64,000 nucleotides of DNA from Obrimoposthia wandeli (taxonomy: Eukaryota), in the NCBI GenBank assembly GCA_977020255.1, contig CDROCS010004896.1, positions 62,001 to 126,000 on the forward strand, read 5' to 3'. Of this stretch, positions 25,125 to 35,341 are shown piece after piece (positions within the stretch are counted from its first letter, which is position 1; each line of letters starts with the position of its first letter). Made by a program: the position numbers and the translations under genes. Below the pieces are notes generated by a model. That model saw only the letters and a list, made by a program, of their open reading frames with translations. It did no database searches and was not told the origin of the DNA.

Positions 25125-25478
25125 TTACTCTGCTGAGAAGGAGCGGGCTTTTAAAGTAAACTCTCTAATAACGTGATAAGTAATTAGACCCCGTTTATTA
25201 ACACGGCACTGCGCATAACCTTCTTGGTCATTATCCTGCAGGTCTAAAAAGATATCAAAATGTTCATTGGTTTCACGACTGGAAGCTTTGTCGATATAGA
25301 CATAAGCATCATTCGGTAATACATACTTAATATATCCCTTACAATGCTCCATTGCATCACCGATATCACCCACCTTGCCCTGCATTTCATATTGCTCTTT
25401 ATACAGGCGACAAGAGGCGAAGATCAGGCAAGCCAGTAAAATAATTAATAATTTATTAACACTCATAAACAACCACAA
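25125..25478 (-). CDS. Small hypothetical lipoprotein
   Basis: Hydrophobic leader with lipobox-like FASC; no recognised domain. Confidence 0.6.
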   Translation of the reverse strand: MWLFMSVNKLLIILLACLIFASCRLYKEQYEMQGKVGDIGDAMEHCKGYIKYVLPNDAYVYIDKASSRETNEHFDIFLDLQDNDQEGYAQCRVNKRGLITYHVIREFTLKARSFSAE

Positions 25479-26182: not shown

Positions 26183-28405
26183 TTAAAACTGGTATTTTGC
26201 ACCGACATTAATAGATCGAGGTTTGCCTGGACGAAAACCATATGGCTTAACGCCGGCCACATATTGCTCATCAAATACATTATCAATGGTGCTATAGAAT
26301 TGCAGATCCGTCATGTAATGATAACTCGCGCTTAAATCAACAATGGTATGCGCTTCAATTAAATCAGCTTTGCTAATGCGGCCTTTACCGGACACATTTC
26401 GCATCTCACTTTGATATAAGATAGAGGAATTCAGCTTCCACTTTTCTCGGCCAATTCCCACTTGCACATTCAAGCGATGCTCGGGTAAATACCCTATTTC
26501 ATAACCTGCTTCAATCACTTGGCCTGTTTCACCAAAGGCACCACTGGTATCGACAAAATCATCTCCAAACTCACCGTGGCTATAGGTATAAGTTGATGAC
26601 AGTGGAACCATAAATCCACTCACTAATAACTGTCGATTCCAGCCGGCTTCTAAGCCATAAACTACGGCACTACCTGCATTGGCTTGCTCGCCCGTATTAT
26701 TGCTATCGCAAGAACCTTGAGCAAAGCTACAAGTACCACTGAATTCGCTGTAATTATTTACGAAGGCAATGACTTCGGCCTGACCTTCTAAAGCCCAAGC
26801 ACCTGAAAAACGAGAACCTAATTCAACGTTCGTGCTTTCCTCTGGTTTCACATTATCTGTAGCACCGGGCGTTGCCGCCGTGAAGCCTTTATAAACACCG
26901 GCCAAAATACCGACATCATCGGTTAGCTGAGAATAAACCCCGATACCAGGCAGCCAGACTGACTGCTTTAACGTATTTTCTGATTCTTTAATACCCGTGA
27001 GTTTTCCATAAACAGTTTTGGATGATTCAATATTTTCATGACGAAGACCCAAGCTTAGAACCGTATCATCAATTTGAATTTTATTTTGAATATAGACCGC
27101 TACCGCTAATGCGTCATTGGTATTTCGCGCAGTCGTTTTAAAGGTGCCATCAACAGCCTGCAAGGTTCCGCCCATTAACATATCGTAATTTTGTTCAGTA
27201 TGATCACGCTTAACTTGGTCTTGATGAATACGAATACCGACTTCAATGTCATTTTTGAAACCAAAAAAATCATAGCGATCATTGATGCGCGTTTGGAGTC
27301 CTTGCGAGAAAAATTTACGGCCGTTGTTACCAATACGTAATTGTTGATCAGTACCGACACTACTCGCTTCGCCTTTCAACACATCATAATAAGCGGCATT
27401 CGTTATCGGGTCGGATAACACATCATCAATGCTGACATCATAAGTATTAAAAGCATTTATTTTAAACCAATCACGATCAAAGTTATTCCTGTACACATTG
27501 GTTGTAACAACCAGGTCATCAACTTCTAATTGATGCGTAAACTGAAATTGCTCATGCGCCCATTCACTTTTATCCAAACTCGACGCTGCATAACGACGAT
27601 TAGCATCATCTTCAAAATCATTTCGGGTTAAACCCAGATACGTTTCGTTAGCATCTTCGTCGGCATAACCGATTTTTAATAAAAACAACTGACTGACTTC
27701 ACCCTGTGTTTGCCAGCTGGTTTTCAGATTGATATCGTTTCTTTCAAAACCCGTATCATCGCTCGCGCCTGCACCATCGAGGTCTTTGAAACCATCAGCA
27801 CTGACTCGTAGACCTTCAATCAAATAACCAAACTGCTCTATTTGCTGGCCTTGATATACGTTGTAGCGCTGGAAATTATCCGAACCATATTGAACATCCA
27901 GTTCGCCCGTCGACTCATAAGGAATCTCGCGGCTCACCATATTTATCGCACCACCGACGGTGGCAGGACCGTATTGAATCGCAGAAGGGCCTTTAAATAC
28001 CTCAACCGCACTCATGCGTGACATATTTGGAAAATAGTACGCAGCGGGAGCCGAATAAGGAGCTGGCCCGGATAAAATACCATCTTCCATTACCGTGATT
28101 TTTTTACTGCGCTCAGGAGACGTACCGCGTAAACCAATATTCGGACGTAAGCCATAGCCATCTTCTTCTTGAATATTGACACCCGGCACCGCATTTAAAA
28201 TACGATGTAAGTCGGTGTATTCAAAAGTATCTAAAGCAAGCTCATCAATTAGAGTCGCTGACCCTGGCTGCCGTAAAATGGCATCTTTACCCCCGGTAAT
28301 ATAAACACTATCAAGCTCAATGCCGTTTTCGGCTTGAGCAATAATAGAATCGGTGGCCAATAACAAAATCAGCGGAAAGGTATAAATAGCAGAAATATAG
28401 TTCAA
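26183..28405 (-). CDS. TonB-dependent receptor (FecA-like)
   Basis: Signal peptide, TonB-box-like DSVYITG, plug motifs PGVNIQEEDGYGLRPNIGLRG and VEVFKGP, C-terminal KYQF. Confidence 0.93.
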   Translation of the reverse strand: MNYISAIYTFPLILLLATDSIIAQAENGIELDSVYITGGKDAILRQPGSATLIDELALDTFEYTDLHRILNAVPGVNIQEEDGYGLRPNIGLRGTSPERSKKITVMEDGILSGPAPYSAPAAYYFPNMSRMSAVEVFKGPSAIQYGPATVGGAINMVSREIPYESTGELDVQYGSDNFQRYNVYQGQQIEQFGYLIEGLRVSADGFKDLDGAGASDDTGFERNDINLKTSWQTQGEVSQLFLLKIGYADEDANETYLGLTRNDFEDDANRRYAASSLDKSEWAHEQFQFTHQLEVDDLVVTTNVYRNNFDRDWFKINAFNTYDVSIDDVLSDPITNAAYYDVLKGEASSVGTDQQLRIGNNGRKFFSQGLQTRINDRYDFFGFKNDIEVGIRIHQDQVKRDHTEQNYDMLMGGTLQAVDGTFKTTARNTNDALAVAVYIQNKIQIDDTVLSLGLRHENIESSKTVYGKLTGIKESENTLKQSVWLPGIGVYSQLTDDVGILAGVYKGFTAATPGATDNVKPEESTNVELGSRFSGAWALEGQAEVIAFVNNYSEFSGTCSFAQGSCDSNNTGEQANAGSAVVYGLEAGWNRQLLVSGFMVPLSSTYTYSHGEFGDDFVDTSGAFGETGQVIEAGYEIGYLPEHRLNVQVGIGREKWKLNSSILYQSEMRNVSGKGRISKADLIEAHTIVDLSASYHYMTDLQFYSTIDNVFDEQYVAGVKPYGFRPGKPRSINVGAKYQF

Positions 28406-28488
28406 AACAGTGAATTCCAGCAGAAGCGATGCTCAGCATTTAAACACAAATGAGACGTATTAGTAATAAGATTAATCAACAATCTAGC

Positions 28489-28513
28489 CGCTTATTCCGA
28501 GCATGAATAAGCG
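28489..28513 (-). terminator. Hairpin after the peroxidase-like gene
   Basis: Perfect 9-bp stem CGCTTATTC / GAATAAGCG. Confidence 0.55.
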
Positions 28514-28528
28514 ACTGAACTAGAAACG

Positions 28529-29806
28529 CTATAAGCCGCAGCTCTCTACTTTTTCAGGGTCTAATAAATTTTCATAGCGGGCATCGGTAAGAGACATAAT
28601 GAAGCAGACTAACGCTTCTATTTCACCATTATCTAAATTTTGCTTATTTTTGCCTAGAATATCATGGGCAATATTCTCATTAATTTCAGCACCTCCCCAA
28701 GGCAAACCCGTTTCAGGGTTGTTAACTGCACCACCAGGGAGATCGAGTGCCACATCTTTAGCGTGTTGATAAAAACGAATTACCGTTTCTAGCTCGTTAA
28801 AAATACCGTTATGCATATAAGGTGCGGTAACCGCAACATTACGCAGAGTCGGCACCTTGAACTTACCTTTTTCCGTTTGGGTATCAACATGTGGGTTATT
28901 GAGTAGTCCCTCGTCCAAACTCGTAGCTCCATTAAAACTGCGTAATGAAGTATTCACTGGCACGCCTATGTTGTGATATTCAAAACTGGTGAATAATTCT
29001 TCTTTAATTCGAAGCGGTTGTAATTGGTGACAAGCAGCACACGTTAGATTACTACCAAAAAATAATACCTGCCCCGTTCTAGCTTTTGACGTAATTGGAA
29101 ACTCATAAAAGTTTTCATCCCTAAAGTTTAAGAATGTTCTATCGTACTTAGAGTCAAAAGGCGAAAATTCATCCGTCTTCTCAAACTCGCCAATACTTTC
29201 AGCCATCGCGGCATACGCTAGCTCAGCATCATCAAATATATTACTGCCAAAAACATGCTCAAAACCTGCGATATATTCAGAGTTTTCTTTGATCCGTTCA
29301 ACCACCGAGGCTTTATCTGGCATATTCATTTCGCCTGGATTCGTAGGAGGACCACCCGCTTGCCCCTTCAGATCTGTTTCACGACCATCCCAGAACTGTC
29401 CCCCCATAAAGCCTTCATAAGCACCGATATCTAAATCAGTCATGATCTTATTTGAACGATCTCGCGTGCCTTCATGAAACAACGGGCTAAAAGAAGCATA
29501 CGCGGCCGAAGGTGCATTACGATCGCCAATGGATATTCCGTTATCGCCTAATGATCCTGCGGCTGCCACATCATCGCGACTCGCATCATTTGTTCTTTCG
29601 TCAATAAAGCCGTGGTCTGTGTTATGACATGTCGCACAAGATTGGGTGCGATCAAACGATAGGCTTTTATCTGAGTACAGCTGCTCACCTAGCGCTACCT
29701 TTGTATTCAGTTCAGGGGCACTGTTAGTATTTGAAGATCCGCCGCAGCCCGATAACAAGGCCGATGAAATACCTGTTATGACTAAACCCATGGTCAATTT
29801 GTTCAT
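28529..29806 (-). CDS. Di-haem cytochrome c peroxidase / MauG-like lipoprotein
   Basis: Lipobox LSGC; CATCH and CAACH haem motifs; GGQFWDGR and FKVPTLRNVAVTAPYMHNG family motifs. Confidence 0.9.
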   Translation of the reverse strand: MNKLTMGLVITGISSALLSGCGGSSNTNSAPELNTKVALGEQLYSDKSLSFDRTQSCATCHNTDHGFIDERTNDASRDDVAAAGSLGDNGISIGDRNAPSAAYASFSPLFHEGTRDRSNKIMTDLDIGAYEGFMGGQFWDGRETDLKGQAGGPPTNPGEMNMPDKASVVERIKENSEYIAGFEHVFGSNIFDDAELAYAAMAESIGEFEKTDEFSPFDSKYDRTFLNFRDENFYEFPITSKARTGQVLFFGSNLTCAACHQLQPLRIKEELFTSFEYHNIGVPVNTSLRSFNGATSLDEGLLNNPHVDTQTEKGKFKVPTLRNVAVTAPYMHNGIFNELETVIRFYQHAKDVALDLPGGAVNNPETGLPWGGAEINENIAHDILGKNKQNLDNGEIEALVCFIMSLTDARYENLLDPEKVESCGL

Positions 29807-29886
29807 GGTTACCCTACACCTCTATATGCACTGCTATTTACGACACGGTAAAAACTATAAGAATACTACTACATTTACTATGGATT

Positions 29887-29934
29887 TGTAATGAGATTAA
29901 TTGTCACAAGTAAATGCTATTGCAAATCATTGTC
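29887..29934. promoter_or_regulatory. Two Fur-box-like sites in the divergent promoter region
   Basis: TGTAATGAGATTAATTGTC (29887-29905; 13/19) and GCTATTGCAAATCATTGTC (29916-29934; 14/19) versus GATAATGATAATCATTATC. Confidence 0.6.
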
Positions 29935-30016
29935 ATTTAGATTACCTTGTCATCAAATATTACTCCGCAGGCTAATTACCTGCAGTCTCTCAATTTATTT
30001 GAATGGATTTAACGCA

Positions 30017-31447
30017 ATGAAATTTCTAAAACTAGCCGCTTGTATAACCTCTGCATCATTACTGATAGCGTGTGGCGGTGACGACTCTGATAGTAGCTCT
30101 GCTCCAGCAATCAACGTAGAAAAAGCTCAGCTAGTTTTGAATACCAATGCTGACATCGCTTTGGCCGCTTATACCGATTCTGTGGAAACAGCAAAGACTC
30201 TTAAAATCGCTTTAACTGCATTAAAAAATACACCATCGGCTACAACGTTAGCCGCTGCTAAAACGGCTTGGTTGGTTTCTCGCGAACCTTATGGTCAGAC
30301 TGAAGTTTATCGTTTCCGTAATAGCCCTGTTGACTCCTTAGATGTTGAAGGCGATTTAAACGCTTGGCCACTAGGTGAAGCACTGATCGATTACGTTGAA
30401 ACTAATACCTCTGATTTCGGCGATGATCAAGTGGGCGTGACAGGCAACGACGCTGGTATCAACGGCGGTGGTGCAATCACGGCTGCTGAAGCACAAGCTG
30501 CGCAAACGAATAACATCATTGGTAATGTTGCAGTAACAATCGATGCTGACTTACTAGGCAATACTTTATCTGCAGAAGATGAGCACGATGTGATTACGGG
30601 CTACCACGCCATTGAGTTTTTATTGTGGGGCCAGGATTTAAATACTAGCGATCAAACAACTACCGACGGTACGGACCGTGATGAAGCGGTTAATACGACT
30701 GCTATGGGCGGTCAGCGTCCATTAGCTGATTTCGTTTCTAGTGCTGATGGCGATACCGCTGCTCGTCGTCACCAATATCTAGAAGTGGTTGTTGATAAGT
30801 TAATTACAGATCTTGAAGCGGTACAGTCTGAGTGGGCTACCGGTTCTGTTACTAACTACCGCGCTACATTCACCACAATTGCAGACGAAGCTGACGCGAA
30901 GCAAAAGCTAACTGAAATCCTTACCGGTATGGGTACATTGTCTGAAGGTGAATTAGCTGGCGAGCGTATGCAAATAGCGTTCTCTTCTAACTCACAAGAA
31001 GATGAGCATTCTTGTTTCTCTGATAATACTCACCGTGATGTTTGGTTAAATGCTGAAGGTGTTTCGAACAGCTTTTACGGTTCTTATGCCGGTTATGATA
31101 GCAACCTCGACGGTACTGATAACGAAACAACTAACTCAGTTGACGGCTATGGTATTGATGAGTATCTAACCGAAGTAGGTTTGACGGGTATTGCTGTTGA
31201 AACAGCGGCTGCATTAACATTAACTCAAACTAACTATAACCTTATCGATGCTTCTGCCCGTGCTGGTACTCCGTTTGATGTATTAATTATGTCAGCGACT
31301 GAAACAAACCCTGTCGCGTTAACTATTAAGTCATTAAACGCGCAGTCTCGTTTAATTCAAGATACTGCTGACCAGCTTGGGTTAGGTGTTGTGGTTGAAG
31401 ATGATGCCTCTGACTGTAATACACAAAGCCCAACCACTGGGTGTTAA
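30017..31447 (+). CDS. Imelysin family (peptidase M75) lipoprotein, IrpA/IcmP-like iron-regulated protein
   Basis: Lipobox LIAC, LNAWPLGEALIDY, GYHAIEFLLWG (GxHxxE), GELAGERM and EDEHSCFSDNTH; start set at MKFLKL (ORF track 29891). Confidence 0.92.
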   Translation: MKFLKLAACITSASLLIACGGDDSDSSSAPAINVEKAQLVLNTNADIALAAYTDSVETAKTLKIALTALKNTPSATTLAAAKTAWLVSREPYGQTEVYRFRNSPVDSLDVEGDLNAWPLGEALIDYVETNTSDFGDDQVGVTGNDAGINGGGAITAAEAQAAQTNNIIGNVAVTIDADLLGNTLSAEDEHDVITGYHAIEFLLWGQDLNTSDQTTTDGTDRDEAVNTTAMGGQRPLADFVSSADGDTAARRHQYLEVVVDKLITDLEAVQSEWATGSVTNYRATFTTIADEADAKQKLTEILTGMGTLSEGELAGERMQIAFSSNSQEDEHSCFSDNTHRDVWLNAEGVSNSFYGSYAGYDSNLDGTDNETTNSVDGYGIDEYLTEVGLTGIAVETAAALTLTQTNYNLIDASARAGTPFDVLIMSATETNPVALTIKSLNAQSRLIQDTADQLGLGVVVEDDASDCNTQSPTTGC

Positions 31448-31483
31448 TATTGAGTTGATTCAATAAAAAGGATTTTATTGATC

Positions 31484-31512
31484 TAGAAAGCCGAGCAATG
31501 CTCGGCTTTCTA
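31484..31512 (+). terminator. Strong hairpin after the IrpA-like gene
   Basis: Perfect 13-bp stem TAGAAAGCCGAGC-AAT-GCTCGGCTTTCTA. Confidence 0.75.
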
Positions 31513-31564
31513 CTATCTTAAACAAAATATTTTTTCCTTATTTGTATGTTGAAGTAGGTTGTAA

Positions 31565-33043
31565 ATGAAAGCTGTAATACTAATCACTAGCGCAATTTTT
31601 TTATTATTCGGCTGTGATAACTCACTAACAAAAGATTATTCCAGCTTAGATGCACCCAAATATAATGAAGAAGAAAACTATCCTGGTGGAGAAACCAGCG
31701 TTTCATATCAACCCTTTGCCAGCTTGCAACTTCCTGCAAAAAATTTAGCCGAAGACCTAAGACCCGATTTTTACGCGGGTAAAGCCCTTGCCAATCAGCC
31801 TTGGATCAAAGCACCGACCACAACTATTGCACGCGATGGCCTTGGCCCAATTTACAATGCCCGCACATGCTTAACCTGCCATATAAAAGGCGGTAAAGGT
31901 TTTATTCCTGCCGATAATAAATCTCCGATTAGCAGCACGCTGGTGCGTCTCAGTAAAGTAGGCGATCAGTTTGATAAATTAAAACAGTCCGGCGTGATTC
32001 CTCATCCTGTTTATGGCGATCAAATTCAGGGCCAGTCTGTTTCGCTGGCACACCAATTAAGACACTCACAAAAGCCGGACACACTAAAACATGATGTTGC
32101 TCCAGAAGCCTATGTCTATATTAACTGGAGTGAAGAGATTTTTAATTATCCTGATAGACATCAGGTCCAGTTACGAAAACCTGAAATAGAGTTTAAAAAT
32201 CTGGGCTATGGCCCACTCGGCGACGATACGTTATTTAGCTTAAGAGTTGCGCCGACGATTCACGGCATGGGCCTCATCGGCTTAATCGCTGAACAAGATA
32301 TTATTAATTTAAGTGATGAGTATGATAAAAACCATGATGGTATTTCAGGTCGCATAAACCAAGTTTGGGATGTAGAAAAACAAGCAACGGTATTAGGACG
32401 TTTTGGTTTAAAAAGTAATAAGCCCACTTTAGATATGATTGTGGGAGGTGCATTCGCCAATGATTTAGGCATTACCAATTCCTTATCGCCTAGCCAGCCT
32501 TGCACTGCCTTGCAGCCAACATGCCTGAAAATCCCTAATGGCAATGATGAACAAGGTGTGGAGTTACCAGACCATTTATTAAAATTGGTGATCAACTTTA
32601 ATCGTGACCTTGCACCGCCTTTACGCAGAAATAGCCAAGATAAAAATGTCTTAGCGGGTCGTGAATTATTTTATAGTAGTGGCTGTAATCAATGCCACAA
32701 CCCTAGATTTGAAACTCAAAGAAGTGATGAAGCGGCTCATTTATCGGAACAAGTTATTTGGCCTTACAGTGATTTTTTATTACACGATATGGGATCTAAT
32801 CTTGCAGATGGCCGTCCAGATTATCTAGCCTCTGGTAACGAGTGGCGTACAGCACCCCTTTGGGGGATTGGCTTACTATCACAAGTTAATGGCAGTATCG
32901 TTTTATTACATGATGGTCGGGCGAGGTCAGTAGAAGAAGCCATTTTATGGCATGGGGGCGAAGCTGAATTAGCCAAAACTCGGTTTATCAATTTGGATAA
33001 GTCAGACCGCATTAATCTGATTAAATTTGTTAACTCGCTTTAG
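31565..33043 (+). CDS. Di-haem oxidoreductase family (DUF1111/DHOR) lipoprotein
   Basis: Lipobox LFGC; DGLGPIYNARTCLTCH and GCNQCH haem motifs; WRTAPLWGIG and LLHDGRAR. Confidence 0.92.
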   Translation: MKAVILITSAIFLLFGCDNSLTKDYSSLDAPKYNEEENYPGGETSVSYQPFASLQLPAKNLAEDLRPDFYAGKALANQPWIKAPTTTIARDGLGPIYNARTCLTCHIKGGKGFIPADNKSPISSTLVRLSKVGDQFDKLKQSGVIPHPVYGDQIQGQSVSLAHQLRHSQKPDTLKHDVAPEAYVYINWSEEIFNYPDRHQVQLRKPEIEFKNLGYGPLGDDTLFSLRVAPTIHGMGLIGLIAEQDIINLSDEYDKNHDGISGRINQVWDVEKQATVLGRFGLKSNKPTLDMIVGGAFANDLGITNSLSPSQPCTALQPTCLKIPNGNDEQGVELPDHLLKLVINFNRDLAPPLRRNSQDKNVLAGRELFYSSGCNQCHNPRFETQRSDEAAHLSEQVIWPYSDFLLHDMGSNLADGRPDYLASGNEWRTAPLWGIGLLSQVNGSIVLLHDGRARSVEEAILWHGGEAELAKTRFINLDKSDRINLIKFVNSL

Positions 33044-33051
33044 GTTTATCG

Positions 33052-34221
33052 ATGAAAATTAACGCATCGCGTCGTTCTTTTAACCAAGCATTATTAAGCA
33101 TCGGCGCAACGGCACCGATGCTGAGCCACAGTGCTTGGAATTTGAACTGGCTGGGACTAGGCAATCAACCACAGCCCAATGAATACTGGCTTTCAGCTCA
33201 GGGACAAAGCCAAGGTCAATATGGATTAGGCTGGGTCGATACCCACGGCGAAAAACTTTCACAAGTCTCTACTCAATTTCGTGGGCATGGCTTCTGCCAA
33301 AACCCAACGCAGCTAGATCATATTATTATGTTCTCTCGCCGCCCTGGCACAGAAGGCATTCGACTTAATCTATCTTCCAGTAAAATTGATGCCACATTTA
33401 GGAGTGCTCCAGATCGTCACATGCATGGCCATGGTTGCTTCAGTGCTGATGGCGAAAAACTCTTTTGTGCCGAGTCAGAAATAAGTACAGGAAAAGGCAA
33501 GATCACTATTCGCGATACTCAGACTCTCACCTTAATCGGTGAGTTTGATAGTTATGGAATTGGCCCTCATGAAATTGCGTTGATGCCAGACGGCAATAGC
33601 TTGGTCGTTGCGAATGGAGGATTATTAACTCACCCTGACTCCGGACGTGAAGTATTAAACCTCAATAGCATGCGCGCCAGCCTAGCTTACATTGATATTC
33701 ATAGCGGTGAGTTAATCAGCGAACATTTTATTCCAGAAAAAAAAGCCAGTATCCGACACTTAGATGTCGCCAACGATGGTACGGTCGCCATCGCGCTGCA
33801 AGTGCAACGTAAGGCTATGGGCCATAATAAGCTCACACCCTTAGCTGCAATTCACAAGCAAGGCCAAGAGATTATATTATTGCAGGCGCCAACAACATTA
33901 TTGTCTAAATTGAATGATTACATGGGCAGTGTGAAAATCAATAATAAAAGTCGCATTACTGCCTTTGCTAGCCCTAAGGGTAATCTCGCCATGTTCTGGC
34001 ATTTGGATGATTTATCCTTACAGGGCTACCATAGCTTTCATGATGTCTGCGGCTTAACCGTTAGCCAAGATAATAAATATTTCGTTTTATCTAATTCAAG
34101 CGGTAAAATTCGCCAAATTAATGCGGCAACTTTAAAGCTTGATAAAGAAAGAAGCCTTAGCTTTCCTCATACTCGCTGGGATAACCACATGATTTCCGTG
34201 TTATCTAGCAATACAAAATGA
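33052..34221 (+). CDS. DUF1513 family Tat-exported beta-propeller protein
   Basis: Twin-arginine leader SRRSF; RGHG, FSRRPG, GHGCFS, GIGPHE, VANGG and SIRHL motifs. Confidence 0.88.
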   Translation: MKINASRRSFNQALLSIGATAPMLSHSAWNLNWLGLGNQPQPNEYWLSAQGQSQGQYGLGWVDTHGEKLSQVSTQFRGHGFCQNPTQLDHIIMFSRRPGTEGIRLNLSSSKIDATFRSAPDRHMHGHGCFSADGEKLFCAESEISTGKGKITIRDTQTLTLIGEFDSYGIGPHEIALMPDGNSLVVANGGLLTHPDSGREVLNLNSMRASLAYIDIHSGELISEHFIPEKKASIRHLDVANDGTVAIALQVQRKAMGHNKLTPLAAIHKQGQEIILLQAPTTLLSKLNDYMGSVKINNKSRITAFASPKGNLAMFWHLDDLSLQGYHSFHDVCGLTVSQDNKYFVLSNSSGKIRQINAATLKLDKERSLSFPHTRWDNHMISVLSSNTK

Positions 34222-34240
34222 TCACACTTGGATTAATTAC

Positions 34241-35341
34241 ATGTTCAAATTTATAGCCTCAATATTGGCTTTTAGCAGCGTTCTTTTTCTTTCAGCCTGC
34301 GGCGGCAGTAGTTCATCATTAAGCACAGGGAATAATGAACTCAACCTTGCTGCTAAAGAAATCATCGACAATACAATTATTCCTGCGTCGAATCGATTTC
34401 AACAGCAAGTCAGCACATTGGTCAGCGAAAGTTCCGACTTTTGTAGTGCTACAAATCAGACTCCTGAGAATTTAACGGCAATACAAAACCAATGGCTTGA
34501 TACTAACCTCGCATGGTTTGAACTATTGCCTTATCTCTTTGGACCGATGGTGAATAGCGAAGTATTACCCACCTATATTTTTATCGATTACCACCGTCAA
34601 CGTGGTGATGATGATACAGCAGTTATCCGCAGTAATATTGATAGCTTAATAGCCAGCGCTACTGATGAAGACTACGATTTAGCACTTTCAAGATTAGGAG
34701 CGAACAGTCTCGGTTTATTAGCGCTAGAAATCGCGGTATTTGAAGACGCCGCTAACCAGTCGATGATTGCAGCGGATATTCTACTTGAATTTCAGAATAC
34801 TCCCCGCAAATGTCAGCTGTTGATTGATATGGGCAATAAATTATTAGTACAAGCAAATGAAGTGCAACAAGGCTGGACTGTTAACTACCGAAACACAGGG
34901 AAAAGCTATCGTGATCTTGTCATTAATAATCAATTAGAAACGCTTCTTGATGATGACTCAGGCGAGTCCGCTATAAAGAAGATCACGATCTCCGTTCAAG
35001 AGTTTTATGATTATTTAGGTAAGCGTAATGTTACTAATAATGTGGCTCAACTATCCAATTCAATTTGGACTTCCCTGGATAAATCATTGAGTAGTACAGA
35101 AGAACTGCTAGTAGGAACGGATGCGACAGAATTGAGTTTGAATCGAATCATGAGCAATAACCGCTTTGACCAAACCGTCATACTGTTTAACGAAAACATG
35201 GCTACTTTGCGCGCAGCACTCGTTGAAAAAAATAGCATCGATATGGCCGCTGCCGCTAAGGCCTTGGATGGGAATTTTAAACGTGAAATACCTGATGCAT
35301 TAAATATCAACTTAGGGCTAAACTTCAGTGATGGGGATTAG
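34241..35341 (+). CDS. Second imelysin-like lipoprotein (His-less motif variant)
   Basis: Lipobox LSAC, AIQNQWLDTNLAW, GLLALE, C-terminal LGLNFSDGD. Confidence 0.8.
   Translation: MFKFIASILAFSSVLFLSACGGSSSSLSTGNNELNLAAKEIIDNTIIPASNRFQQQVSTLVSESSDFCSATNQTPENLTAIQNQWLDTNLAWFELLPYLFGPMVNSEVLPTYIFIDYHRQRGDDDTAVIRSNIDSLIASATDEDYDLALSRLGANSLGLLALEIAVFEDAANQSMIAADILLEFQNTPRKCQLLIDMGNKLLVQANEVQQGWTVNYRNTGKSYRDLVINNQLETLLDDDSGESAIKKITISVQEFYDYLGKRNVTNNVAQLSNSIWTSLDKSLSSTEELLVGTDATELSLNRIMSNNRFDQTVILFNENMATLRAALVEKNSIDMAAAAKALDGNFKREIPDALNINLGLNFSDGD

What the first reader, a model, noticed from the sequence alone, without database searches (positions are those of the whole stretch)
26183..35341. Six-gene, entirely exported iron/redox locus with two di-haem cytochromes, two imelysins and no inner-membrane permease
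Seen: divergent arms share one intergenic region. Left arm: di-haem peroxidase-like lipoprotein, then a TonB receptor. Right arm: imelysin, di-haem DUF1111, Tat DUF1513, imelysin. All six products carry a lipobox, Sec or Tat signal. Known: the imelysin-DUF1111-imelysin-DUF1513 core occurs in Pseudomonas (IcmP locus), cyanobacterial IrpA is iron-regulated, and imelysin-fold EfeO works with the haem peroxidase EfeB and permease EfeU; the mechanism of the DUF1111/DUF1513 core is not established to my knowledge. Inference: a periplasmic or surface redox relay that captures iron from the receptor, changes its oxidation state with c-type haems and hands it on. No EfeU/FTR1 or ABC permease is encoded here. 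DUF1513 also precedes the second imelysin here.
Basis: partly seen in the sequence, partly recalled or inferred. Interest (0 to 1): 0.72.

Follow-up and report, generated by a model that had tools for sequence, protein, structure and literature searches.

The report
Exported iron-redox locus with MauG-type enzyme
A marine Oleispira-like bacterium carries a variant of a known but mechanistically unsolved iron-regulated system of exported proteins, here joined to its own outer-membrane receptor and to a close relative of the protein-oxidising enzyme MauG, which gives new handles for finding out how the system works.

Summary
Six adjacent genes in two divergent arms all encode exported proteins: a TonB receptor, a di-haem lipoprotein, imelysin 1, DHOR/DUF1111, Tat-signal DUF1513 and imelysin 2. 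The flanking genes are unrelated and no permease is present.

Two corrections:
- Imelysin 1 starts at 30017, not 29891.
- The 'peroxidase-like' protein is about 48% identical over its full length to Paracoccus MauG. It keeps the Tyr-His haem ligands and the distal pocket but lacks Trp199 and any mau context.

The four-gene core is a known, iron/Fur-regulated family whose mechanism is unsolved, and the lack of a permease is a known trait of it.

New here:
- **A clade with swapped gene order.** DUF1513 precedes imelysin 2.
- **Recurrent linkage of this MauG clade to the core.** It lies within 6 kb in 15 of 33 sampled genomes, in five layouts. It co-occurs with DUF1513 in 27 of 33 genomes, against 71 of 268 genomes without it.
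- **A receptor clade tied to DUF1513.** The receptor's three closest relatives in the sample all sit beside DUF1513 genes.
- **Two conserved non-coding elements.** A Fur-box-like operator lies in the shared promoter region and a stem-loop follows imelysin 1.

A DUF1513 cysteine that seemed to track MauG did not stay specific in a wider sample.

Verdict: a new variant of a known kind, of moderate interest.

The parts
26183..28405 (-). TonB-dependent outer-membrane receptor, 740 aa. It has a Sec signal, a TonB-box-like LDSVYITG, a plug domain and a C-terminal Phe.
   Evidence: Pfam Plug E 4.7e-14. TIGR01783 scores 152.7 bits, below its 223.5 cut-off. The best solved match is the FecA plug, E 3e-24. 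Its three closest homologues in 301 genomes (59-71% identity) all lie beside a DUF1513 gene.
28529..29806 (-). MauG-clade di-haem c-type lipoprotein, 425 aa. Lipobox Cys21; haem motifs C57xxCH61 and C256xxCH260.
   Evidence: E 4e-89 and about 48% identity over the full length to Paracoccus MauG. The equivalents of His35, Trp93, Gln103, Pro107, Glu113, His205 and Tyr294 are kept. Trp199 is replaced by Ser next to a 2-residue insert. TIGR03791 scores 91 bits against a 444-bit cut-off.
29807..30016 (.). Shared divergent control region.
   Evidence: It lies between the two start codons. The imelysin 1 start at 30017 is fixed by alignment with four orthologous loci.
29887..29905 (+). Upstream Fur-box-like site (13 of 19).
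   Evidence: It is conserved in L025 and partly in the other loci.
29916..29951 (+). Conserved operator block with the core ATTGCAAATCATTGTCATT (14 of 19 to the Fur consensus). It overlaps promoter-like hexamers on both strands.
   Evidence: Near-invariant in five loci whose proteins are only 60-77% identical. It is unique in the 64 kb window at up to 3 mismatches, with 0.03 expected.
30017..31447 (+). Imelysin 1, a lipoprotein of the ICMP/IrpA type with GYHAIE (GxHxxE) and EDEHxCFSDNTH motifs.
   Evidence: Pfam Peptidase_M75 E 3.6e-60. The motifs are at least 90% conserved in 34 orthologues.
31484..31512 (+). 13-bp perfect stem-loop just after imelysin 1. It is a likely partial terminator or an mRNA-stabilising 3' hairpin.
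   Evidence: -22.3 kcal/mol, z -7.15. It is present in L012, L014 and L015, and shorter in L025. In Bacterioplanoides L016 it is kept through compensatory changes.
31565..33043 (+). DHOR/DUF1111 di-haem lipoprotein. It has the CCP/MauG fold with an inserted beta domain. Haem motifs are C102xxCH106 and C374xxCH378; the Cys313/Cys320 pair is invariant.
   Evidence: Pfam DHOR E 3.4e-88. No solved homologue is found by sequence. The model has pLDDT 88. Z is 14-16 to hydrazine synthase gamma, bacterial CCPs and MauG.
33052..34221 (+). DUF1513, a Tat-exported seven-bladed beta-propeller. A ring of invariant residues (H79, H127, H173, H236, Y290, D331, H379) sits at the start of the innermost strand of each blade.
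   Evidence: Pfam E 1.7e-87. The model has pLDDT 93. Invariant columns come from 63 sequences. Fold matches are generic seven-bladed propellers.
34048..34050 (+). Codon of DUF1513 Cys333 (motif D-V-C-G). It lies on the inner strand of blade 6 and pairs with Gly292 on blade 5.
   Evidence: The family is dimorphic here, G292/C333 versus A292/A333. Cys is found in 39 of 41 DUF1513 proteins from genomes with the MauG clade and in 18 of 67 without it. The pattern is phylogenetically clustered.
34241..35341 (+). Imelysin 2, a lipoprotein of the IPPA/PA4372 type. It has GxxxxE (G158..E163) without the His, and a conserved Cys68/Cys191 pair.
   Evidence: Pfam Peptidase_M75 E 4.2e-14.

Best explanation
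This is a probably iron-repressed, entirely extracytoplasmic iron-acquisition and redox module. It belongs to the imelysin / DHOR(DUF1111) / imelysin / DUF1513 family (the PA4370-PA4373 and VC1264-VC1267 type). In this variant DUF1513 precedes imelysin 2, and two accessory genes are attached on a divergent arm: a dedicated TonB-dependent receptor and a MauG-clade di-haem lipoprotein.

Shown:
- the identity and export signals of all six proteins;
- the folds of DHOR (CCP/MauG-like di-haem) and DUF1513 (seven-bladed propeller with a ring of invariant His, Tyr and Asp residues on the inner strands);
- conservation of the layout;
- recurrent linkage of both accessory genes to the core;
- a conserved Fur-box-like operator between the arms;
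- a conserved stem-loop after imelysin 1;
- no FTR1/EfeU in the locus, and none found in relatives' genomes.

Inferred mechanism:
1. Under low iron, Fur leaves the shared operator and both arms are transcribed. The hairpin makes imelysin 1 the most abundant product.
2. The receptor imports an iron chelate of unknown nature.
3. In the periplasm, the membrane-anchored imelysins and the DUF1513 propeller bind the metal or the chelate.
4. The two CCP-fold di-haem proteins use peroxide or an electron donor to change the redox state of the iron or of its ligand.
5. The iron then crosses the inner membrane through an unlinked transporter that is not of the FTR1 type.

The MauG-clade enzyme most likely acts on a protein partner or supplies a long-lived high-valent oxidant, rather than simply removing peroxide.
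For: - Domain assignments come, and signals and motifs.
- The six-gene layout is identical in four Oleispira MAGs. The core plus the MauG gene is found in Bacterioplanoides, in eight further genomes of the order, and in two Myxococcales MAGs.
- Genome-level co-occurrence of the MauG clade with DUF1513 is 27 of 33 against 71 of 268, Fisher p 9e-10. Fifteen copies lie within 6 kb in five layouts.
- The closest receptor homologues lie beside DUF1513. A 40%-identical receptor sits inside the core operon in two Alteromonadales loci.
- Operator evidence is (combined p 1e-12 over 38 loci, not independent).
- Bacterioferritin genes sit inside a related locus.
- FTR1 was not found in four relatives' genomes while the controls rang.
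- Iron regulation, Fur control and cofitness of canonical loci are reported in PMC3143127, 10.1101/072470, PMC7600106 and PMC4324432.
Against: - No expression data exist for this organism; no RNA runs were found.
- The Fur box match is only 14 of 19, and three other 14-of-19 sites in the window lie by non-iron genes.
- The receptor falls below every NCBIfam cut-off, so its cargo is unknown.
- No metal binding by any component is shown, and Xu et al. saw no effect of ferric ion on imelysin stability (PMC3143127).
- Fitness phenotypes of canonical loci are pleiotropic, for example chlorite and various metals (10.1101/072470). The Leptospira homologues respond to peroxide as well as to iron (PMC7567364).
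- Neither the receptor nor the MauG gene accompanies most cores: 15 of 98 DUF1513-bearing genomes in the order sample have the MauG gene linked.
Confidence: 0.65

Rival explanations
1. Maturase model. The MauG-clade enzyme is not a redox partner for iron. It is a maturation factor that oxidatively modifies one of the co-encoded exported proteins, most plausibly DUF1513 near Cys333 and Tyr290 in the propeller's central ring. This would create a protein-derived ligand or cofactor needed for metal binding or catalysis, as MauG does for methylamine dehydrogenase and MbnH does for MbnP.
For: - The protein is 48% identical to true MauG, with the Tyr-His haem and distal pocket kept, and there is no mau context.
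- In three loci with the canonical order the gene directly follows DUF1513.
- The MauG clade occurs almost only with the G292/C333 form of DUF1513: 39 of 41.
- C333 and G292 sit on adjacent inner strands beside invariant D331 and Y290.
- The precedents are described in PMC11951088 and PMC6405878.
Against: - Cys333 is also present in 17 of 27 MauG-lacking genomes of the phylum sample.
- The tree needs only 3-5 changes, and the independent-pairs test is not significant.
- No Trp, the usual MauG or MbnH target, tracks the enzyme in any core protein.
- The hole-hopping Trp199 is missing, and the inter-haem Trp varies within the clade.
- BthA shows that Tyr-ligated family members can be plain peroxidases (PMC6405878).
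Confidence: 0.2
2. Periplasmic peroxide or oxidative-stress defence. The two CCP-fold di-haem proteins remove H2O2, and the imelysins and the propeller are accessory. Iron regulation would then reflect the overlap between the iron and oxidative-stress regulons.
For: - The Leptospira imelysin operon is induced by H2O2 (PMC7567364).
- A DUF1513 mutant is specifically sensitive to chlorite (10.1101/072470).
- Both di-haem proteins have the CCP fold.
Against: - It does not explain a dedicated TonB receptor, bacterioferritin insertion, the Fur-like operator or two metal-site imelysins.
- The MauG-type Tyr ligand is atypical for detoxifying CCPs (PMC7567364, PMC6405878).
Confidence: 0.1
3. The system handles another metal or a non-metal cargo, for example copper as in the MbnPH systems, or an organic substrate brought in by the receptor. 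Alternatively it frees iron by oxidatively destroying the organic ligand rather than by changing the iron's oxidation state.
For: - MbnH-type enzymes serve copper uptake (PMC11951088).
- A solitary DUF1513 that is 51% identical sits next to a DUF411 protein, a family often linked to copper.
- The receptor's cargo is unassigned.
- DUF1513 mutants are sensitive to several metals (10.1101/072470).
Against: - The Fur-type operator, the bacterioferritin neighbours and iron-responsive expression of homologues all point to iron (PMC7600106).
- No MbnP-like partner is present, and the MbnH model scores below its cut-off (129 bits against 363).
Confidence: 0.1

Closest known systems
Imelysin / DUF1111 / imelysin / DUF1513 operon (P. 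aeruginosa PA4370-PA4373 with IcmP; V. cholerae VC1264-VC1267 with IrpA)
   Same: The same four protein families are present, with the same motifs: GxHxxE in the first imelysin, GxxxxE in the second, two CxxCH in DHOR and a Tat signal on DUF1513. All are exported, no permease is encoded, and a Fur-type site lies upstream.
   Different: DUF1513 precedes the second imelysin. The proteins are only about 30-45% identical to canonical ones and form their own clade. A MauG-clade gene and a TonB receptor are attached on a divergent arm.
EfeUOB / EfeM ferrous-iron uptake
   Same: It has an M75 imelysin-fold metal-binding protein working with an exported haem peroxidase, under iron regulation.
   Different: There is no EfeU/FTR1 permease in the locus, and none was found in relatives' genomes. 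The haem proteins are c-type di-haem CCP-fold proteins, not the DyP-type EfeB. The imelysins carry no cupredoxin domain.
MauG (TTQ biogenesis in methylamine dehydrogenase)
   Same: About 48% identity over the full length. Both haem sites, the Tyr294 ligand, Trp93 and the distal Gln103, Pro107 and Glu113 are kept.
   Different: It is a lipoprotein. Trp199 is absent. It has an insertion of about 15 residues and a C-terminal Cys pair. No mau genes lie nearby, and no MADH light chain was found in five related genomes (which had no positive control). It is below the TIGR03791 cut-off.
MbnH-MbnP (with the MbnT receptor) and BthA
   Same: A MauG-like di-haem enzyme is encoded beside a periplasmic metal-handling partner and a TonB-dependent receptor, and Tyr-His ligation is present.
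   Different: There is no MbnP-like protein. Sequence similarity is far weaker than to MauG (E 3.5e-18 to MbnH and 3e-31 to BthA).
Hydrazine synthase beta/gamma and quinohaemoprotein amine dehydrogenase alpha/beta
   Same: A CCP-fold di-haem subunit is paired with a seven-bladed propeller subunit. The top Foldseek hits of DHOR and DUF1513 are chains C and B of the same hydrazine synthase entry.
   Different: The resemblance is at fold level only. Scores are tied with other CCPs and other propellers. There is no sequence similarity above cut-offs and no evidence of a complex.

Membership tests
Imelysin/DUF1111/DUF1513 iron-regulated cluster (PA4370-73 type) | First imelysin with the GxHxxE motif | tested here: met
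   G237-Y-H239-A-I-E242 (ORF numbering) is at least 90% conserved in 34 orthologues. Pfam E 3.6e-60.
Imelysin/DUF1111/DUF1513 iron-regulated cluster (PA4370-73 type) | DUF1111/DHOR di-haem protein | tested here: met
   Pfam DHOR E 3.4e-88 over the full profile. Both CxxCH motifs are invariant.
Imelysin/DUF1111/DUF1513 iron-regulated cluster (PA4370-73 type) | Second imelysin with GxxxxE and no His | tested here: met
   G158, A161 and E163 are conserved, and the protein has no HxxE.
Imelysin/DUF1111/DUF1513 iron-regulated cluster (PA4370-73 type) | DUF1513 protein with a Tat signal | tested here: met
   Pfam E 1.7e-87. R7 and R8 are invariant or nearly so in 63 sequences.
Imelysin/DUF1111/DUF1513 iron-regulated cluster (PA4370-73 type) | Gene order imelysin-DHOR-imelysin-DUF1513 | tested here: not met
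   Here and in 17 related loci DUF1513 precedes imelysin 2. This is why it is filed as a variant.
Imelysin/DUF1111/DUF1513 iron-regulated cluster (PA4370-73 type) | Fur/iron-dependent expression | tested here: inconclusive
   A conserved Fur-box-like operator is present, but no expression data exist.
EfeUOB | EfeU/FTR1 inner-membrane permease | tested here: not met
   None is in the locus. PF03239 was not found in four relatives' genomes, while the controls rang.
EfeUOB | DyP-type haem peroxidase EfeB | tested here: not met
   Both haem proteins are c-type di-haem proteins of the CCP fold.
MauG (TTQ biosynthesis enzyme) | Two c-haems with His35 and with the His205/Tyr294 ligands | tested here: met
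   The Tyr is kept in 29 of 29 clade members.
MauG (TTQ biosynthesis enzyme) | Surface Trp199 for hole hopping to preMADH | tested here: not met
   Ser plus a 2-residue insert here, and Gln or Ser across the clade.
MauG (TTQ biosynthesis enzyme) | mau operon or MADH subunits as substrate | tested here: not met
   No mau genes flank the linked or the unlinked copies. PF02975 was not found in five genomes, but that search had no positive control.
MauG (TTQ biosynthesis enzyme) | NCBIfam equivalog TIGR03791 cut-off | tested here: not met
   91.3 bits against a cut-off of 443.85.
MbnH/MbnP | MbnH model cut-off and an adjacent MbnP partner | tested here: not met
   TIGR04039 scores 129 bits against 363. 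No MbnP-like gene is in the locus.
TonB-dependent siderophore receptor | Plug plus 22-strand barrel scoring above the TIGR01783 cut-off | tested here: inconclusive
   The plug is clear. The full-length match scores 152.7 bits, below the 223.5 cut-off. The cargo is unknown.

The most novel reading that the evidence does not exclude
A clade of 'orphan' MauG enzymes, the closest known relatives of the TTQ-forming MauG, has the imelysin/DHOR/DUF1513 system as its physiological partner. The enzyme would install a protein-derived modification in the central His/Tyr/Asp/Cys ring of the DUF1513 propeller, or in another component. That would make this a third MauG-type protein-maturation system, after MADH and MbnP, and would give the long-unexplained DUF1513 core a defined cofactor and active site.
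Probability: 0.2. Interest if true: 0.78.

Novelty: new variant of a known kind. Interest (0 to 1): 0.5.

Why it matters
The imelysin/DUF1111/DUF1513 cluster is widespread: 98 of 301 genomes sampled in one order and 47 of 301 across the phylum carry DUF1513. It is iron-regulated in pathogens and in marine bacteria, and it has had no mechanism since it was first described.

This variant offers three experimental handles that the canonical operon lacks:
- a dedicated receptor whose cargo can be identified;
- a MauG-type enzyme whose chemistry (a bis-Fe(IV) state and protein oxidation) can be assayed and whose substrate can be sought by mass spectrometry;
- a defined residue dimorphism (G292/C333 against A292/A333) next to an invariant His ring in the propeller.

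It also places many 'MauG' annotations in genomes without methylamine dehydrogenase into a concrete genomic context.

Tried and rejected
1. **Cys333 as a specific marker of MauG presence.** In the order-level sample it looked near-perfect: 32 of 34 against 1 of 40. The DUF1513 tree then showed only two main MauG-positive clades, 3-5 label changes and a non-significant independent-pairs test. In a phylum-level sample 17 of 27 MauG-negative genomes also have Cys. I downgraded it to a lead.
2. **A Trp, Tyr, His or Met in imelysin 1, DHOR or imelysin 2 that tracks MauG in both gene-order groups.** None was found.
3. **A conserved alternative context for the unlinked MauG copies.** They share no neighbours.
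4. **MADH light chain in related genomes.** None was found, but the search had no positive control, so it carries little weight.
5. **Specific structural relatives of DUF1513.** Only generic seven-bladed propellers came back, tied at Z 30-34. The shared hydrazine-synthase top hit for DUF1513 and DHOR is not distinguishable from other CCPs and other propellers.
6. **Other 14-of-19 Fur-like sites in the window as internal controls.** They lie by non-iron genes and are probably chance.
7. **RNA evidence.** No RNA run holds the locus. Contigs of DNA runs show only that it is present.
8. **A terminator between the MauG gene and the receptor.** No significant structure was found.
9. **The large protein-database searches were not used.** The family scans and genome searches settled the identities.

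Full report
**What is there.**
The region 26183-35341 holds six ORFs in two divergent arms.
- Pfam assigns them as a TonB-dependent receptor, a CCP_MauG di-haem protein, an imelysin, DHOR/DUF1111, DUF1513 and a second imelysin. NCBIfam agrees but places none above an equivalog cut-off.
- Reading the translations, the receptor has a Sec signal and DUF1513 has a twin-arginine motif (SRRSF). The other four have lipoboxes.
- Each of the two cytochromes has two CxxCH motifs.
- DHOR has Asp at position +2 after the lipid-modified Cys, and the other three lipoproteins have Gly. By the E. coli rule this would keep DHOR on the inner membrane, but I did not test that.
- The neighbours are unrelated: an NYN-domain protein, PfkB and PBP1 on one side and DNA polymerase II on the other. 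The locus therefore has six genes and no permease.
- The listed ORF for imelysin 1 is 42 codons too long. Orthologous loci share the ATG at 30017, so the intergenic region is 29807-30016.

**Where it comes from.**
The window is one contig of a 1.35 Gb, 6912-contig assembly that also holds five other DUF1513 loci on other contigs. It is therefore a host-sized assembly with several bacteria in it.
- The closest relatives of the locus are Oleispira MAGs at 60-77% protein identity, then Bacterioplanoides.
- Near-identical DNA occurs in biofilm and seawater metagenomes from other studies. No RNA run was found.

**The core is known.**
- Xu et al. (PMC3143127) described the Fur-regulated PA4370-PA4373 and VC1264-VC1266 operons. 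They defined the two imelysin types and noted that such clusters lack EfeU.
- Price et al. (10.1101/072470) found the four genes cofit and proposed a role in iron uptake, with pleiotropic phenotypes.
- Homologues are induced by iron limitation in V. cholerae and Aliivibrio (PMC7600106, PMC4324432), and by peroxide in Leptospira (PMC7567364).
- I found no paper that establishes a mechanism.
- Here imelysin 1 keeps GxHxxE and an EDEHxCFSDNTH motif, and imelysin 2 has GxxxxE.

**What is different.**
- *Gene order.* In this window and in 17 related loci DUF1513 precedes imelysin 2. Their DUF1513 proteins form a well-supported clade.
- *The left-arm cytochrome.* It aligns over its full length with Paracoccus MauG at E 4e-89 and about 48% identity. 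This is far better than its match to bacterial CCPs, MbnH or BthA.
  - It keeps His35, Trp93, Gln103, Pro107, Glu113, His205 and the MauG-defining Tyr294. The Tyr is kept in all 29 clade members examined.
  - It lacks Trp199 and sits in no mau context. It is a lipoprotein and fails the TIGR03791 cut-off.
  - The inter-haem Trp varies across the clade.
- *Linkage of the MauG clade to the core.* In 301 genomes sampled from the order of the Oleispira MAG, homologues of at least 45% identity occur in 33 genomes.
  - 27 of those 33 also have DUF1513, against 71 of the other 268. These counts are not phylogenetically independent.
  - In 15 genomes the gene lies within 6 kb of DUF1513, in five layouts: divergent from the swapped-order core, directly after DUF1513 in the canonical order, divergent from a canonical core, upstream of one, and after imelysin 2 in Myxococcales.
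  - Unlinked copies share no neighbours.
- *The receptor.* Its three closest homologues in the sample (59-71% identity) all lie next to a DUF1513 gene.
  - Two of them belong to a second kind of locus: a DUF4856 lipoprotein, an imelysin, a DUF1513 paralogue, a fatty-acid-hydroxylase-like membrane protein and the receptor.
  - A 40%-identical receptor sits inside the core operon in two Alteromonadales loci.

Neither accessory gene is universal, however.

**Regulation.**
- The intergenic region holds two Fur-box-like sites, scoring 13 and 14 of 19.
- The second lies in a block (core ATTGCAAATCATTGTCATT) that is nearly invariant among five loci whose proteins have diverged to 60-77% identity. It is unique in the window.
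- It overlaps promoter-like hexamers on both strands, although such hexamers occur at chance frequency.
- Fur-like sites of at least 13 of 19 lie upstream of imelysin 1 in 30 of 38 related loci.
- One related locus carries two bacterioferritin genes between the MauG gene and imelysin 1.
- A perfect 13-bp stem-loop follows imelysin 1 (z -7.15). It is conserved in relatives, with compensatory changes in Bacterioplanoides. This suggests imelysin 1 is made in excess of the downstream proteins.

**Structures.**
- DUF1513 models confidently (pLDDT 93) as a seven-bladed propeller.
  - The invariant residues of 63 homologues include H79, H127, H173, H236, Y290, D331 and H379. Each sits at the start of the innermost strand of successive blades.
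  - Fold matches are generic propellers tied at Z 30-34: YVTN, lactonases, hydrazine synthase beta, the quinohaemoprotein amine dehydrogenase beta subunit and nitrous oxide reductase.
- DHOR has no solved homologue by sequence. It models (pLDDT 88) as a CCP/MauG-fold di-haem protein with an inserted beta domain. Z is 14-16 to hydrazine synthase gamma, CCPs and MauG alike.
- The locus therefore encodes two CCP-fold di-haem proteins and a propeller. That combination recalls hydrazine synthase and the quinohaemoprotein amine dehydrogenases, but only at the level of fold.

**A lead that weakened.**
- DUF1513 is dimorphic at two equivalent inner-strand positions on adjacent blades: G292/C333 or A292/A333.
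- In the order sample, Cys333 was present in 32 of 34 proteins from MauG-containing genomes and 1 of 40 from the others.
- The tree shows this reflects two clades and few changes.
- In a phylum-wide sample all 7 new MauG-positive genomes have Cys, but so do 17 of 27 MauG-negative ones.
- The MauG clade thus occurs almost only alongside the Cys form, but the Cys form does not require it. This fits a maturase acting on DUF1513 but is not good evidence for one.

**Permease.**
FTR1 was not found in four relatives' genomes that carry the locus, while the control genomes rang. The system is therefore not an EfeUOB with the permease encoded elsewhere. How iron would cross the inner membrane is unknown.

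**Conclusion.**
The locus is a new variant of a known, unsolved system. Its most interesting feature is the recurrent attachment of a MauG-clade enzyme and a specific receptor clade, which makes the mechanism experimentally approachable.

Noticed in passing
G000 contigs C2926, C3685, C2858, C1089, C4362 (loci L001-L011, L027-L031): The same assembly holds five more DUF1513 loci on other contigs. Four have the canonical order at about 30% identity. One, at a contig end, has the swapped order at 64-83% identity. The 1.35 Gb assembly therefore contains several different bacteria, including a second Oleispira-like one.
   Followed up: partly
L052:10-7234 (G001:C73) and L053:6637-13726 (G056:C6): A second kind of imelysin/DUF1513 locus occurs in the Oleispira MAG and in another genome. 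It encodes a DUF4856 lipoprotein, an imelysin, a divergent Tat DUF1513 paralogue, a fatty-acid-hydroxylase-like membrane protein and a receptor 58-59% identical to the window's.
   Followed up: partly
L034:8605-9551: Two bacterioferritin-type genes are inserted between the MauG-clade gene and imelysin 1 in a related locus.
   Followed up: partly
L066:7677-11356 (G285): A solitary DUF1513 gene, 51% identical to the window's, has no other core gene nearby. It sits next to a DUF411 protein and SelO.
   Followed up: no
window 31484-31512: A perfect 13-bp stem-loop lies right after imelysin 1. It is conserved across Oleispira and Bacterioplanoides loci, with compensatory base changes in the latter.
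   Followed up: yes
L020 and L021 (Thalassotalea, Paraglaciecola): The core here has two tandem DHOR genes, and the receptor is inserted between imelysin 2 and DUF1513.
   Followed up: no
window 28529-29806 and 30017-31447, with their orthologues in swapped-order loci: In the swapped-order clade both the MauG-clade protein (C401/C423) and imelysin 1 (C509/C518 in ORF numbering) have a C-terminal cysteine pair. Their counterparts in canonical-order or unlinked loci lack it. The MauG-clade proteins of this clade also carry an insertion of about 15 residues.
   Followed up: partly
window 25125-25478 (-): A 117-aa ORF with no Pfam match lies between the PfkB kinase gene and the NYN-domain gene. 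I did not examine it further.
   Followed up: no
window 28400-33100 in public runs X2-X6: DNA 95-100% identical to the locus is present in biofilm and seawater metagenomes from other studies. The bacterium is therefore free-living or biofilm-forming, not confined to the host of this assembly.
   Followed up: partly
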